This document shows, piece after piece, positions 1 to 44,119 of a stretch of 64,000 bases of DNA. The translations under genes were made by a program, and so were the position numbers. Under the pieces are notes generated by a model, which searched no databases, was not told the DNA's origin, and was given only the letters and a program-made list of their open reading frames with translations. Origin of the DNA: Neoconidiobolus thromboides FSU 785 (Eukaryota > Fungi > Entomophthoromycota); the NCBI GenBank assembly GCA_025603075.1, contig MU626367.1:10261-74260 (forward strand), in the 5' to 3' direction. Every line of letters begins with the position of its first letter. The stretch's first letter is position 1.

Positions 1-54
1 TTCCGTCGCCTTTCTCCTAGTGAAGTTAAGGATTATTTAGCTACTTCAAATTAA
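1..54 (+). CDS. PRE8: 3' end of 20S proteasome subunit alpha type-2 (partial, gene starts before the window)
   Basis: Bases 1-54 translate to FRRLSPSEVKDYLATSN*, matching the PSMA2/Pre8 C-terminus (FRRLTPTEVKDYL-type). Only 17 residues are visible. Confidence 0.7.
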   Translation, partial: FRRLSPSEVKDYLATSN

Positions 55-669
55 GTGATTAAATTGGCTATACTTTTTCCGGTTATTTTTAATATATATT
101 TGGTAAAATTATTAATAGTTAAGTTGATCTATGCTTTAAATGTTTTGAATTGTAAGATTAAACGATAATCTTTATTTTTTGTTGAATCTAAATGTTGATA
201 AAGCTTGGTTTTATTATTATAAATATCAATATACTACATAAAATCATCATATTCTATATATGTATAATATCGTAGTATATTGTTTTTAGTATATAATTTT
301 GTATATTTTAATATATTAGATATTATACCAATAAAAAAAATGAAATAGGTATTATTATCAAAAATCTACTTGCAAATTCATGTCTATTTTTGTTATCAAT
401 TCAGACCATTATTTAGATTGTTTACATGGTTTAATTCCTTCAAAGCTATTATTGTATATAGTAATTTGAATATTCAAAGCTAATAACTATATAACTAAAT
501 AAGCTTACACTTTATTATACACTTTAAACCAAGAATTCAAACCAATTAAATAATTAACAATAACAAAGCACAATTAAGTAATATTAGAAATGAACCCATC
601 ATGACGTAAAGTAATAAAAAACTATAAATAAAATGCTAAGTGAAAATAAACTTTAAAAGATTTTAAAAA

Positions 670-1091
670 ATGAGATTATTACGTTTATTACCCAAGATAT
701 CAACAGTGAGAGTAAGCAAGATGGGCAAGTTACAAATGATTTATGGTGTCAATCGAATAAGCATTGAAGGCTTCAAATCCAAAATTGAAGATCCAGCTGA
801 AAATAGAATCTTTGACATTATTAAGAAGGTGCAGGGCATAGATAAAGAGGTAATCGATAAAAAAGTAATTCAAATAAAACACATTTATAATCTCTATCTT
901 GATAGTTAAAACCCAATATGGAGTTATCTAAAGACTTGGGAGTGAACTCTAGTAATTTAGTTCCATTTCTTAATGCTTTAGAAAAGGAGCTACTCTTTAA
1001 TATTCCTATTGAGAAAGCTATCACTTTTACTACTCTTGCTGATCTCCTCAGATACCTTAGTGAATTGGAAGATAAAAGGGTTACAAAATAA
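670..1091 (+). CDS. Divergent mitochondrial acyl-carrier-protein-like protein (2 exons)
   Basis: Exon 1 670-864 (alternative in-frame donor after 849), intron ending TAG at 905, exon 2 906-1091 = LKPNMELSKDLGVNSSNLVPFLNALEKELLFNIPIEKAITFTTLADLLRYLSELEDKRVTK*. Aligns without gaps to exon 2 of the canonical ACP at 43613-44119, with a phase-0 intron in the same register. Basic, amphipathic N-terminus resembles a mitochondrial presequence. Confidence 0.7.
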
Positions 1092-1250
1092 ATGGTTATA
1101 TGTATTATGTAGTAAGATACTTGTATTTTATTTTGTTTTTATAAAATTTCAATATTGAAATCGATTCCATTTTAAACAAGAACTATTATTAGAATGATAA
1201 AAGATAAATTAATATTTAAATGTAGTTTATTATATTTTTGTAAAGAAAAT

Positions 1251-3309
1251 CTAAAGTTTAGCTTTTTCACTAGCAGCAAATACGGCTCTAATAAGCTCCA
1301 AAGATTTATGAAGTGAATCAGCCATAGCATTCACATCGGGTGTGATATAACCATCATTTGTATTATTTACTGGCTTAATAGCTGTAACATTAAATTGAAT
1401 TGCATCTTTTTTAATCATATAGGCAATACCATAACCATCAGGTACAACTTCACCCCAACCATAACCATCAAAGTGTTCAGAACTTAATTGAGAAGTAGAT
1501 AAGTTCCAATGGCTAGTAAAAGTATAAGAAGGGTCTTTGAATAGTTCTGGTACAGGTTCATCCTTATTTACGCTAAGTTTAAGACCTAATAAATGTCTAT
1601 CAACTCCTTTACCTTCTACAGCATCAGAAATATAAGCTACATGGGATTGAATTGCCTTTAAAACTAATTCATGTTTTTGTTTTAAACTTAATTGATCATT
1701 AACCATTCCTTTACAAAAAGCAACACTATCTTCAGATACAGTTCTACAAACTTCAGTACGTCCAGAATGGAATCTTCTTGTAGTAGCCGATTCATAAGTA
1801 GGTCCAAATTTACCATGTAAAAGATAAAAGGCTAATTGAATTACCATTTGAGCATAGGCATCCGGACTAACCTTAAATTTTTTAATACTATTTTTACCAT
1901 AGCTTGATTTAACCACTTTTAGATCATGTTTATTAATTAAATTATTAAAAGCAACTTCGGATTCCTTAATAATAGTTTGAATATCATTATTTAGTTCAAA
2001 TTTTAATTCTGTTGGTGGTAATAATCCTTCTTTATTGAAAGAAGTACCATGGTTGACTTGTTTTTTAGTTAAAACAGTATTGACATAATCATTTAAACGA
2101 CAAGTTGGAGTACCATCCATTCTTGAATGCTAAAGTAAATAATTATTATTAAACTGTATTAAGTATAATAAAATAAGCTTACTTCTCCGTTGAAACCAGC
2201 TACCCCATTTTCAAATACAATAAATTGAAGTGATTTATCAAAAAATCTGTTTTTACCATCTCCGTGCCAGCAAGCTCTAGAAGCCTCATCTTTATTAGCA
2301 GGTGAAGTTTCATCCAAACATAAAAGGAAAGAAGCAGATTCAACAGCATTTAATGATTCTGAATTTTTTTTAGAATGTTGAAGCAACTTATTACGTGCCT
2401 AAATAAATAAATAAATAAACTGATAGTTAAAAGAAATGCCAATAAACTTACATCTAACCAGATATCCCTATTTTGAGTAGTAAGAAGACCAATAGGATTT
2501 GGATCTGCTTTATCACCAGCTAATTCAATAATTTGACTTAATTGATAATCAATTTCTTTGGTAGATAATCGTTGACCATTTTTATTATTTAATTCCAATT
2601 TAAAAAATTTGTTTTTTCTAGCTACAATCACATGTTGATTCTTTTCCATATCAAAAGTTTCAACATAATCCGAACCTTCTGCTGGGATACGAGTAGCATT
2701 AAACATGTATTTATAGGTGGACATGCATAATGGTCCTTTACGATCTTTCTCTGGTTCTAGTTCTTCACTTACAACTAAATCTTTAAATTGTAAAGCAGCT
2801 TGAATAATCTCTGCACCTCTGGTAGTATTCTTAATTTGACTTGGTAGCATATTATAAACATAAAAATAAGATACATAAATAACAACTGGATCACGATACG
2901 AAAAATAAGCTATATCATTCCACCAAGCATCTAACCAGTTTAAAATAGATTCATTTGAAGCCCTAGCTTGTAATCTCTTTTGTAGTTCGGGTCCAACTTC
3001 GTTTTGAAACTTTTCAACTACTTTTAAAGTATTTTGATATTGCTCTTCAGATACCAATGGTTTAACAGTTTTAATATATTTCTTTAATGTAGCCTCTAAT
3101 TCAGGAACTGGAAGTTTTGGTAAACTATTTTGAAATTGATATAATGGTTTAGTTATTTCTGGAGTAGAGGTAGTAGCAGCTGCTAAGTTTAAATTGACTT
3201 TGGAAGTGCTCATAGTTCTAATTAAATTTCTAAAAATAAAGGAATTCAACATTTACATTAAAATATTATTCATTTTAACTTACCTGCTCTTTAAAAGGGT
3301 ACGTAACAT
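1251..3309 (-). CDS. CAT2: Carnitine O-acetyltransferase (4 exons), mitochondrial presequence plus PTS1
   Basis: Exons 3309-3284, 3229-2452, 2398-2183, 2129-1251 join in frame at GT-AG junctions. Motifs LPKLPVPELEATL, catalytic GEHSRMDGTP, TYESATTRRF, GVDRHLLGL; C-terminal -AKL. Confidence 0.92.
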
Positions 3310-3795
3310 TAAGCTTTTACTTTTTTTTAAATAAAAGACTTCGAGTAGATTTTCATGAGCTCTTTTTATTGCTCAACTGTGTCTCTTTTTCAATTGAAAG
3401 CACATGATCGAAAAATCTCTATATTAATTAAGCAACTTACCCAAAAATTTTCAAAAGAGCAGATGACCTCAATCCACCGCATAAACTCCAACCAATTATG
3501 CAGAACCTCAGTATGCAAGTTGTTTATTTATTGGTTGGAGTATAAGCTTCATCTTTAGCCGAGTTTAAACCCTAAAAATTAGAAACTTTAATGGATTAAA
3601 AATGCGAGCTTAAATGGTGTAAACTAGTTGAGTTTGGTAATATGCTAATTATATACGGAATGAGAAAACCCCTTCGATTGTAAGTTGGTGGGACTATTAT
3701 CCAGGATAATAGTGTAAGAGTGTTGTTTTTTTCGAAAATCATCATCTTAAATTTATGATTGTTTAAAAACAAAAATATCTATTAAATTAACAAAT

Positions 3796-41951: not shown

Positions 41952-42626
41952 ATGTTAACTAAATTAAAGCAATTTAAATCCCTTTATCAAAGTAAAGCAG
42001 GGATAAGTATGACATCCAGTTTACCAGCCATTAATTATCCAACATCCAATTACAAACCCGCTTATTTAAGAAATACCTTATTATTAATAGCTGGTTTAGT
42101 TGCTCCAAGCTTGTATTATAGTACTAAATCAACATCAAACTCTGGTATAAAATTAGAACCTTACAACTTACCTGTTATTTCAAAACATAAAATCCAACTT
42201 GAAGCTAATGAAGAAGTCACTTTACTCAGTAAATTACAAACTCAATTATTCCCAACCTCTACTCATTTAACCAAACAAACATTAAAAAGAGAAGATTTAA
42301 TTCAAGCTGAGTTCAGCGGTAAATTAACTAAAGTTTATTATATGGGTGCCAATGTTTGTGGTCATAAAGGAATTATTCATGGAGGTTTATTAGCTACTTT
42401 ATTACAAGAAGCTACTAGAGAATTTGCTGGTTTTACAGATCCTAAGGTTAATGTTAAATATTCTGTTAATTATAGAAGACCAGCATTCTCGGATCAACCT
42501 TTAATTGTTATGGCTCAACCTCCGGTTAATTCTGTTGATGGAGTTACTATTAAGGCTGCTATTATGGATCAAAATGGTCAAGTGTTAACAGATATTATTA
42601 CCACGTTTCCAGGCCAAAAGATTTAA
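41952..42626 (+). CDS. Mitochondrial hot-dog-fold (PaaI-like) thioesterase-family protein
   Basis: Presequence and TM segment; GANVCGHKGIIHGGLLATLLQE; YSVNYRRP. Confidence 0.75.
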   Translation: MLTKLKQFKSLYQSKAGISMTSSLPAINYPTSNYKPAYLRNTLLLIAGLVAPSLYYSTKSTSNSGIKLEPYNLPVISKHKIQLEANEEVTLLSKLQTQLFPTSTHLTKQTLKREDLIQAEFSGKLTKVYYMGANVCGHKGIIHGGLLATLLQEATREFAGFTDPKVNVKYSVNYRRPAFSDQPLIVMAQPPVNSVDGVTIKAAIMDQNGQVLTDIITTFPGQKI

Positions 42627-43612: not shown

Positions 43613-44119
43613 TTAGACAGCATCATTTCTTAAACTAATATATTCAATAACGTCTTTAACAGTTTTAATTTCAACTGAATCATGTTCCGGTATTTCAATA
43701 GAAAACTCTTCTTCAACTGCCATAATAACTTCAACTGTATCTAAACTATCCAATTTTAAATCTTTGGTTAAATGGGCTTCAGCAGTGAGCTAAAAAAGAG
43801 AGAGAAAGGATTAATTATTGTCTTATGAATGAAAAAAATAAACTTGTTATAGAAGTATGATTAAAATAAAAAATTATTATCATTAATTATAAAGCTAATA
43901 GAATAGTAATTAATGGAATATAAAAAAACTTACTAAACCTTGATCAACTTTATCGAAGTCCTTCAATAAATCTAAAACTCTTTCTTGAATTATTAACTTT
44001 GGGTTACCACTTGGAGCACCATAAAAACGTAAACTTTGATTATTTACAATCATATTGGATTTCATTAAATTCTTTCCATTGAATAATTTTAAACTGGCTA
44101 AAGATCTCAAATAACGCAT
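43613..44119 (-). CDS. ACP1: Mitochondrial acyl carrier protein (2 exons)
   Basis: Exons 44119-43934 and 43789-43613; presequence; LTKDLKLDSLDTVEVIMAVEEEFSIEIPE with an intact DSL phosphopantetheine site. Confidence 0.93.

What the first reader, a model, noticed from the sequence alone, without database searches (positions are those of the whole stretch)
670..1091. Second mitochondrial ACP-like gene with a degenerate phosphopantetheine motif (DSLD replaced by NSSN)
Seen: splicing the 79-aa ORF to a downstream exon gives a ~127-aa protein that aligns in register with the canonical ACP at 43613-44119 (LKPNMELSKDLGVNSSNLV vs LTAEAHLTKDLKLDSLDTV), with an intron in the same position and phase. 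Known: PPTases recognise the DSL motif, and mtACP also acts as an adaptor for LYRM proteins (complex I, Fe-S assembly, mitoribosome). Inference: this paralog keeps the serine but has lost both flanking acidic residues and is far less acidic overall, so it may be a non-acylated scaffold, a decoy or a neofunctionalised carrier. The ORF track misses it.
Basis: partly seen in the sequence, partly recalled or inferred. Interest (0 to 1): 0.7.

Follow-up and report, generated by a model that had tools for sequence, protein, structure and literature searches.

The report
Expressed, charge-stripped duplicate of mitochondrial ACP
The insect-pathogenic fungus Neoconidiobolus thromboides carries, beside its normal mitochondrial acyl carrier protein, an old, spliced and transcribed duplicate that keeps the carrier fold and the cofactor serine but has lost nearly all the acidic partner-docking surface, so it probably works as something other than a fatty-acid carrier, and no relative of it is known.

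Summary

**Gene model.** Window 670-849 plus 906-1091 (+) is a real two-exon gene of Neoconidiobolus thromboides FSU 785. Contigs of two independent public runs skip exactly 850-905 (GT..AG). The same run also skips an intron of the neighbouring carnitine acetyltransferase gene, so it holds RNA.

**Corrections.** The product is 121 aa, not about 127 aa: donor 849 is used, not 864. The gene is not unannotated; GenBank holds it as hypothetical protein KAI9293905.1.

**Fold and origin.**
- It passes Pfam PP-binding (34.7 bits, cut-off 20.8).
- It models as a four-helix ACP, and every top solved-structure match is a type II ACP.
- It shares intron position, intron phase and presequence traces with the canonical mtACP 43 kb away.

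**What changed.**
- DSLD has become NSSN.
- Net charge of the ACP domain is -2 (pI 5.1), against -12 (pI 4.3) in the canonical protein.
- A proline replaces the helix II glutamate.

**Relatives.** An exhaustive search of 1.84 billion representatives found nothing closer than generic ACP domains.

**Reading.** The divergence is old (dS above 1) and has preserved the fold, which argues against simple decay. Whether Ser75 carries the cofactor, and what the protein binds, is untested. My best guess, at 0.42, is a partner-binding ACP-fold subunit that has left mtFAS.

The scan had noted this same stretch in an overlapping window, not on other DNA.

The parts
670..849 (+). Exon 1 (60 codons). Residues 1-40 are presequence-like. 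Residues 41-60 form ACP helix I.
   Evidence: Translation. It is identical to residues 1-60 of P0001. Contigs cover 678-847. Helix 42-55 in the AF2 model.
670..789 (+). Presequence-like N-terminus (residues 1-40). It has 9 basic and 2 acidic residues and still aligns with the canonical presequence (MRxLRxL, VNxxS).
   Evidence: Mean pLDDT is 52-68. Targeting itself was not tested, and the ATG at 670 is not covered by any laid contig.
850..905 (+). Intron, 56 nt, GT..AG, phase 0. Same position and phase as the canonical ACP intron.
   Evidence: Skipped in contigs of X1 (word depth about 1992) and X2 (5.3). The joint is reported as 847/904 with the cut 2 places further right.
906..1091 (+). Exon 2 (61 codons plus TAA at 1089-1091). 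It encodes the loop, helices II-IV and the C-terminal tail.
   Evidence: Alone it scores 29.4 bits on Pfam PP-binding, cut-off 20.8. NCBIfam ACP models score it up to 28.8 bits, all below their cut-offs.
945..956 (+). Degenerate attachment motif N74-S75-S76-N77 (AAC TCT AGT AAT), aligned with canonical D-S-L-D (GAT AGT TTA GAT).
   Evidence: Codon view. In 43 other ACP sequences the -1 position is Asp in 39 and the +1 position is Ile, Leu or Val in 39.
963..965 (+). Pro80 codon (CCA), at the place of the helix II glutamate (E41 in E. coli numbering).
   Evidence: Glu stands here in 36 of 43 ACP sequences and Pro in none. The model starts helix II at residue 78, three residues after the serine; the canonical model starts it at the serine.
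43613..44119 (-). Canonical mitochondrial ACP gene (P0079, 120 aa). Exons 44119-43934 and 43789-43613. This is the parent-type paralogue used for comparison.
   Evidence: It matches Yarrowia ACPM2 at 86 bits and the Chaetomium complex I ACP at 78 bits.

Best explanation
The locus is an old DNA-level duplicate of the fungus's own mitochondrial ACP gene, and it is still spliced and transcribed. It encodes a 121-aa protein with a presequence-like N-terminus and a four-helix ACP fold.

Selection has kept the fold (hydrophobic core, DLG loop, IP turn, TxxDxxxY) and the serine. It has replaced the surface that canonical ACPs use to dock on PPTases, mtFAS enzymes and LYRM proteins:
- D35N, L37S, D38N, E41P, M44N and E48K in helix II (E. 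coli numbering).
- D51L, E53N, D56I and E60I in the helix II-III face.

I infer that it no longer shuttles acyl chains in mtFAS. I infer that it acts as an ACP-fold protein-binding subunit or adaptor in mitochondria, held to its partner mainly by the new, less charged and more hydrophobic face, and probably unmodified or poorly modified.

Shown: gene structure, splicing, transcription, fold, paralogy, charge loss and absence of known orthologues. Inferred: location, lack of cofactor and the adaptor role.
For: - **Splicing.** The spliced form is present in two runs from two studies. X1 also skips the CAT intron 2130-2182, so it holds RNA.
- **Identity.** The model is identical to GenBank KAI9293905.1.
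- **Family.** Pfam PP-binding scores 34.7 bits over residues 46-111.
- **Fold.** The AF2 model has pLDDT 85-95 for residues 41-120, with helices 42-55, 78-89, 95-98 and 104-120. All top Foldseek hits in the PDB are type II ACPs, with TM 0.72-0.84 and rmsd 1.5-2.0 Å. The nearest ESM Atlas clusters are eukaryotic mitochondrial-type ACPs.
- **Paralogy.** Intron position and phase are the same as in the canonical gene, and the N-terminus still aligns.
- **Age.** dS is about 1.3-1.5 and dN about 0.7-0.8, so the duplication is old.
- **Against neutral drift.** Unconstrained drift of exon 2 to 31% identity keeps the frame open in only 2.3% of trials. Drifted sequences score a mean of 1.0 and a maximum of 20.7 bits on an ACP HMM. 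The real exon 2 scores 58.8 bits; 0 of 2000 trials reach it.
- **Charge.** Net -2 against -12.
- **Deviant positions.** The residues at -1, +1 and +5 from the serine are unusual among ACPs.
- **Literature.** The residue after the serine and the helix II hydrophobic patch are needed for Sfp activity (PMC8857579). LYRM binding in yeast and human depends on the acyl-Ppant group and on Asp/Glu residues of ACP (PMC8547962).
Against: - The serine is retained, with a second serine beside it. That would be unnecessary for a pure scaffold.
- Asn at -1 occurs in trypanosomatid mitochondrial ACP. Ser at +1 occurs in 3 of 43 ACP domains. So modification is not excluded.
- No orthologue exists, so constraint could not be measured by dN/dS along this lineage.
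- The HMM was built from hits chosen with this protein and is biased in its favour. The independent Pfam model gives 29.4 bits for this exon 2 against 36.7 for the canonical one.
- No partner, no localisation and no protein-level evidence is available.
Confidence: 0.42

Rival explanations
1. It is still a true carrier. Ser75 (or Ser76) is phosphopantetheinylated and the protein is a specialised holo-ACP. It would be dedicated to one LYRM partner or complex I position, or to a separate acyl pathway, as Yarrowia divides labour between ACPM1 and ACPM2.
For: - The serine and the DLG loop are kept through an old divergence.
- The match passes the Pfam cut-off.
- NSLD is functional in trypanosomatid mtACP, which appears in mitoribosome assembly structures.
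- Fungi with two mtACPs, each with its own role, are known (PMC4381221).
Against: - The +1 Leu, which Sfp-type PPTases need, is gone.
- By my recollection of the AcpS-ACP complex, all helix II residues that AcpS-type enzymes contact are replaced (D35, L37, D38, E41, M44). This was not checked against a paper here.
- The model places the serine in a loop three residues before helix II.
- Only 3 of the 12 acidic positions between D35 and E60 remain acidic (read from the sequence).
- There is no specific similarity to ACPM1 or ACPM2; neither is among the best 60 PDB matches.
Confidence: 0.3
2. It is a functionless relic. The duplicate is transcribed and spliced because its promoter and splice sites survive, but the protein does nothing and is drifting.
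For: - There is no orthologue anywhere: a singleton cluster in 15 billion proteins and nothing in metagenome contigs.
- The functional motif is degenerate.
- Pairwise dN/dS is fairly high, about 0.5.
Against: - The frame, start codon and both splice sites are intact although dS exceeds 1.
- Substitutions spare fold-defining positions far more than drift would (Pfam above its cut-off).
- The structure is predicted with high confidence.
- In X1 the transcript contig has a word depth of the same order as the neighbouring CAT gene, which is a weak measure.
Confidence: 0.17
3. It is a decoy or regulator. An apo-ACP mimic would sequester a PPTase, mtFAS enzymes or LYRM proteins away from the canonical ACP.
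For: It has the ACP fold, the serine loop is retained, and it may share a compartment with the canonical ACP.
Against: Those partners recognise the acidic helix II/III face, and LYRMs also recognise the acyl-Ppant group. Exactly these features are lost here, so competitive binding is unlikely.
Confidence: 0.06
4. It is not mitochondrial. Translation would start at Met18 (ATG 721), the product would lack most of the presequence, and it would act elsewhere.
For: No laid contig covers the ATG at 670. The furthest 5' contig begins at 678.
Against: - Contig ends are not transcript ends here. The CAT contig also stops inside its coding sequence.
- The N-terminus keeps similarity to the canonical presequence.
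- The ATG at 670 has an A-rich context.
Confidence: 0.05

Closest known systems
Canonical fungal mitochondrial ACP (Acp1 / NDUFAB1 / ACPM), here P0079 at window 43613-44119(-)
   Same: - Two-exon gene with the intron at the same codon and phase.
- Presequence-like N-terminus that still aligns.
- PP-binding domain and four-helix fold.
- DLG loop and serine kept.
   Different: - 28% identity.
- NSSN instead of DSLD.
- Net charge -2 against -12.
- Pro in helix II.
- Several acidic positions turned hydrophobic (D51L, D56I, E60I in E. coli numbering).
- Predicted helix II starts three residues after the serine.
Yarrowia lipolytica / Pichia pastoris ACPM1 and ACPM2 (two mtACP paralogues in complex I; PMC4381221, PMC2953923)
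   Same: A fungus with two mtACP-derived genes, which suggests a division of labour.
   Different: - ACPM2 keeps DSLD and the acidic helix II (alignment).
- The canonical gene here resembles ACPM2 (86 bits) and ACPM1 (67 bits).
- The paralogue shows no special likeness to either.
- Both Yarrowia proteins are described as cofactor-bearing.
Plasmodium falciparum divergent mitochondrial ACP (PMC8547962)
   Same: An ACP-fold protein whose canonical carrier chemistry is compromised. It is proposed to act as a protein adaptor through a more hydrophobic contact.
   Different: - Plasmodium replaced the serine by Phe, lacks mitochondrial FASII and has only this mACP.
- Plasmodium keeps the acidic residues that pair with Isd11.
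- Here the serine stays, the acidic surface goes, and a canonical mtACP coexists.
Trypanosomatid mitochondrial ACP (PDB 5zws, 2m5r, 6sga)
   Same: Asn precedes the carrier serine (LGLNSLDVV). These are among the best sequence matches (28-30 bits).
   Different: The trypanosomatid protein keeps Leu and Asp after the serine and the acidic helix II.

Membership tests
PP-binding / ACP-like superfamily (Pfam PF00550) | Profile match above the curated cut-off | tested here: met
   34.7 bits for the whole protein and 29.4 bits for exon 2 alone. The cut-off is 20.8.
PP-binding / ACP-like superfamily (Pfam PF00550) | Four-helix bundle with a long loop between helices I and II and a short helix III | tested here: met
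   AF2 gives helices 42-55, 78-89, 95-98 and 104-120 with pLDDT 85-95. The top Foldseek hits are all ACPs, TM 0.72-0.84.
PP-binding / ACP-like superfamily (Pfam PF00550) | Serine at the N-terminus of helix II within a (D/H)S(L/I) motif | tested here: inconclusive
   The serine is present at the aligned column. The flanks are N and S. In 43 ACP sequences these are Asp in 39 and Ile/Leu/Val in 39. The model puts the serine three residues before the helix.
PP-binding / ACP-like superfamily (Pfam PF00550) | Covalent 4'-phosphopantetheine on that serine | not testable with these tools
   This needs mass spectrometry or an in vitro PPTase assay.
Mitochondrial ACP (Acp1/NDUFAB1/ACPM) | Descent from the eukaryotic mtACP gene | tested here: met
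   Same intron position and phase, an alignable presequence, and the same 74-kb contig. The nearest Atlas clusters are eukaryotic 120-130 aa ACPs. No tree could be built, because no other fungal ACP sequences were available by reference.
Mitochondrial ACP (Acp1/NDUFAB1/ACPM) | Cleavable mitochondrial presequence and matrix location | tested here: inconclusive
   The first 40 residues hold 9 basic and 2 acidic residues, with low pLDDT. The R-x-Y cleavage motif of the canonical protein (RFY|G) is not kept. The 5' end of the transcript is unknown.
Mitochondrial ACP (Acp1/NDUFAB1/ACPM) | Strongly acidic protein (pI about 4) with an acidic recognition helix II | tested here: not met
   pI 5.09 and net charge -2, against pI 4.26 and -12. 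Of the acidic positions D35-E60, 3 of 12 are kept, against 9 of 12 in the canonical protein (read from the sequences).
Mitochondrial ACP (Acp1/NDUFAB1/ACPM) | Acyl-Ppant-dependent binding of LYRM proteins; substrate of mtFAS enzymes | not testable with these tools
   No complex prediction or biochemistry is available here.
Acylation-independent divergent mACP (Plasmodium type) | Carrier serine replaced by a hydrophobic residue that enters the LYRM interface | tested here: not met
   Ser75 is retained. For the Plasmodium Phe113 see PMC8547962.

The most novel reading that the evidence does not exclude
A fungus that still has mtFAS and a normal mtACP has evolved a second, acylation-independent ACP-fold adaptor. 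The electrostatic and acyl-Ppant plug-in mode of binding would be replaced by a permanent hydrophobic interface. One ACP-dependent assembly (a LYRM complex, a complex I position or a mitoribosome factor) would thereby be uncoupled from the acetyl-CoA/acyl-ACP signal. This would be a natural counterpart, within an organism that has mtFAS, of what Plasmodium did after losing mtFAS.
Probability: 0.15. Interest if true: 0.65.

Novelty: new variant of a known kind. Interest (0 to 1): 0.4.

Why it matters
Mitochondrial ACP is now seen as a hub that reports mtFAS and acetyl-CoA status to Fe-S synthesis, respiratory-complex assembly and the mitoribosome. It does this through acyl-Ppant-dependent binding of LYRM proteins.

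This is a natural paralogue that keeps the fold and the serine, has shed the acidic docking surface, and sits beside an intact canonical copy. It offers a ready-made separation-of-function variant. Finding whether it is modified and what it binds would show which ACP surface features are needed for which partnership.

If it proves to be a drifting orphan, it is only a note on gene duplication in an early-diverging fungus. At present it is a single-species curiosity without functional data.

Tried and rejected
- **Alternative donor at 864 (126-aa product).** No contig supports it. All joints use 849/906.
- **Orthologue searches.** All returned only the protein itself or generic ACP domains: the word-index search with the 79-aa ORF and with the full protein, exhaustive phmmer against 1.84 billion representatives, cluster look-up and a metagenome contig scan. 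So dN/dS along the lineage could not be done.
- **Pairwise dN/dS against the canonical paralogue.** dS is saturated at 1.3-1.5 and YN00 failed. The ratio of about 0.5 averages over both lineages and is not trustworthy.
- **First drift simulation.** It timed out. I re-ran it with nonsense mutations simply rejected. The HMM used there is biased because its members were picked with this protein.
- **Third ACP copy in the window.** None found (tblastn).
- **A tree to test ACPM1- or ACPM2-type affinity.** Not possible.
- **Papers on AcpS-ACP contacts.** Beld 2014 and Gong 2007 are not held. The statement on AcpS contacts rests on my own knowledge.
- **Earlier notes of this scan.** Word searches for ACP, LYRM and PPTase gave nothing useful.
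- **Joined exons.** I never typed or concatenated them. Exon-wise searches were by reference. The full-length protein was used only as database record P0001, which a search returned.

Full report
**Gene model**

The window is AT-rich eukaryotic DNA (26% G+C). Reading 670-1091 on the + strand gives these parts:
- An ATG at 670 in an A-rich context, followed by 60 codons to 849.
- A 56-nt GT..AG intron at 850-905.
- 61 codons plus TAA at 906-1091.

The canonical ACP lies on the minus strand. Exon 1 is 44119-43934 (62 codons). The intron is 144 nt and runs GTAAGT..AG. Exon 2 is 43789-43613 (my first coordinates were off by one).

In both genes the carrier serine is the 15th codon of exon 2 and the intron is in phase 0.

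**Transcription and splicing**

The run index listed nine runs holding parts of 560-1200. I laid contigs of four of them on window 1-3600.
- A 344-nt contig of X1 covers 691-847 and 904-1090. A 253-nt contig of X2, from another study, covers 706-847 and 904-1014.
- Both skip 56 bases with GT..AG ends once the cut is moved two places right. That is exactly 849/906.
- X1 also skips 2130-2182 in the neighbouring gene (CT..AC on the + strand), so X1 holds RNA.
- An X4 contig ends at 847 and an X3 contig begins at 904.
- Nothing supports a donor at 864.

Contig ends are not transcript ends. The contig of the neighbouring gene also stops inside its coding sequence. So the 5' end is unknown, and the ATG at 670 is not covered; the furthest 5' contig starts at 678.

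**Identity of the organism and the record**

The 79-aa read-through ORF retrieved one database protein, P0001. It is 121 aa and is named 'hypothetical protein K502DRAFT_342815 [Neoconidiobolus thromboides FSU 785]', KAI9293905.1, with PF00550 precomputed. Its sequence equals the spliced model residue for residue. The gene is therefore annotated, though unnamed.

Exon-wise searches were made by reference, and the full length was used only as P0001.

The canonical gene is P0079, 'acyl carrier protein', 120 aa, on the same 74-kb contig.

**Family and fold**

- Exon 2 alone scores 29.4 bits on Pfam PP-binding (cut-off 20.8). The canonical exon 2 scores 36.7 bits.
- The whole protein scores 34.7 bits over residues 46-111.
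- NCBIfam ACP models match at up to 28.8 bits, all below their cut-offs. The canonical exon 2 reaches 71 bits.
- Against PDB sequences the best matches are bacterial and trypanosomatid ACPs at 28-32 bits.
- An AlphaFold2 model built on a 45-row alignment has pLDDT 85-95 for residues 41-120. Its helices are 42-55, 78-89, 95-98 and 104-120. The first 40 residues are of low confidence.
- Every top Foldseek match in the PDB is a type II ACP, including ACP bound to ISD11 and ACP in complex I. TM by target is 0.72-0.84 and rmsd 1.5-2.0 Å.
- The nearest ESM Atlas clusters by features are eukaryotic ACPs of 120-130 aa.

The transcript is spliced, the ACP fold is hit, and the four helices are predicted.

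**Origin**

P0001 and P0079 align over 116 residues at 28% identity, E 8e-11. The alignment includes their N-termini: MRLLRLL against MRYLRSL, and MIYGVNRIS against MI--VNNQS. Together with the shared intron and the same contig, this points to a DNA-level duplication of the whole mtACP gene.

The duplication is old. dS is about 1.3-1.5 (saturated) and dN about 0.7-0.8. Only 7 of the 16 conserved residues keep the same codon, and the serine itself is TCT against AGT.

P0079 is an ordinary fungal mtACP. It scores 86 bits to Yarrowia ACPM2, 78 to the Chaetomium complex I ACP and 67 to ACPM1. P0001 has no special likeness to either Yarrowia paralogue. There is no third copy in the window.

**What changed**

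E. coli ACP numbering follows from the gap-free register between the DLGxxS and IP motifs; P0001 residue number equals the E. coli number plus 39. The substitutions are D35N, L37S, D38N, E41P, M44N, E48K, D51L, E53N, D56I, E58K and E60I. E47, E49 and E57 stay acidic.

That leaves 3 of 12 acidic positions in this stretch, against 9 of 12 in P0079 (read). Net charge of the domain is -2 with pI 5.09, against -12 with pI 4.26.

Among 43 other ACP sequences the -1 position is Asp in 39, the +1 position is Ile, Leu or Val in 39, and the E41 position is Glu in 36 and never Pro.

The model of the canonical protein starts helix II at its serine (helix 77-91). In the paralogue helix II starts at residue 78, three residues after Ser75.

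What is kept:
- Asp70, Leu71 and Gly72.
- Ser75.
- The hydrophobic periodicity of helix II.
- Ile93 and Pro94.
- Thr103-x-x-Asp106-x-x-x-Tyr110.

**Is it decaying?**

- Unconstrained AT-biased drift of the canonical exon 2 to 31% identity leaves the frame open in 2.3% of trials.
- When only nonsense changes are forbidden, drifted sequences score a mean of 1.0 and a maximum of 20.7 bits on an ACP HMM. The real exon 2 scores 58.8 bits, and 0 of 2000 trials reach it.
- That HMM was built from hits selected with P0001 and is biased towards it. The independent Pfam model still puts the exon above its cut-off.

So the substitutions spared the positions that define the fold. This argues for selection on a folded protein rather than neutral decay. 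It does not say which function.

**No relatives**

- The word-index search found only P0001 itself.
- Exhaustive phmmer against 1.84 billion representatives gave P0001 at 246 bits. Next came multi-domain proteins whose several ACP-like stretches add up to at most 62 bits, and single-domain ACPs at 36-38 bits. One of these, from the amoebozoan Sappinia pedata, aligns over almost the whole length.
- The 90% cluster is a singleton.
- A metagenome scan found nothing.

Because the duplication is old, orthologues are likely to exist in unsequenced Neoconidiobolus species, but none is on record.

**Mechanism**

According to the papers read:
- ACP helix II is the acidic recognition helix for partner enzymes, and Asp35/Asp38 and Glu47/Asp51/Glu53/Asp56 form its two cation sites (PMC12469350).
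- Sfp-type PPTases need the hydrophobic residues of helix II, including the residue after the serine (PMC8857579).
- Isd11 binding in yeast and human needs the acyl-Ppant group and Asp/Glu residues of ACP. Plasmodium mACP replaced the serine by Phe and binds Isd11 without a cofactor (PMC8547962).
- Yarrowia uses two cofactor-bearing mtACPs with separate roles (PMC4381221).

The paralogue has lost just the features needed for PPTase, mtFAS and canonical LYRM docking, and it has gained hydrophobic residues on that face.

My best reading, at 0.42, is an ACP-fold binding subunit or adaptor that has left mtFAS and is unmodified or poorly modified. The rivals are:
- A specialised holo-carrier (0.30). 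It is favoured by the retained serine and by the fact that NSLD works in trypanosomatids.
- A transcribed relic (0.17).
- A decoy (0.06).
- A non-mitochondrial product starting at Met18 (0.05).

**Verdict**

This is a new variant of a known kind (mtACP paralogues), and interest is moderate at 0.4. The sequence facts are clean and the protein is a natural separation-of-function variant, but it is a single-species orphan with no functional evidence.

Noticed in passing
window 1251-3309 (-): The convergent neighbour is a carnitine O-acetyltransferase gene (Pfam Carn_acyltransf, 312 and 242 bits on two exon ORFs). Its stop codon lies 160 nt from the paralogue's stop. Its intron 2130-2182 is skipped in run X1.
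   Followed up: partly
window 41952-42626 (+): A 224-aa intronless ORF lies convergent with the canonical ACP gene, about 1 kb from its stop. It contains a GHKGIIHGG-type stretch that earlier notes call a hotdog thioesterase. Pfam gave no family at E <= 0.001, so that name is unconfirmed here. Both ACP genes thus face an acyl-thioester enzyme gene tail to tail, which may be coincidence.
   Followed up: partly
window 43613-44119 (-): The canonical mtACP is closer to Yarrowia ACPM2 (86 bits) and the Chaetomium complex I ACP (78 bits) than to Yarrowia ACPM1 (67 bits). This suggests that ACPM1 is the derived yeast paralogue.
   Followed up: no
window 560-581 and 2283 onward: A 3771-nt contig of run X1 matches only 22 bases at 560-581 and then jumps to 2283, with the shorter side 21 letters. 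This is most likely a chance or repeat match, not a transcript joint.
   Followed up: no
window 1533: A single G>A difference in one low-depth contig of run X4, inside the carnitine acetyltransferase gene. All other laid contigs are identical to the window, so the runs filed under four coded organism names hold essentially the same strain or species.
   Followed up: no
P0018:304-390 (a 401-aa protein from the representative library): An ACP-like domain with DLSIRSSRLP. It has Ser-Ser at the attachment site and a proline early in helix II, much as here, but with basic flanks. It is unrelated in context.
   Followed up: no
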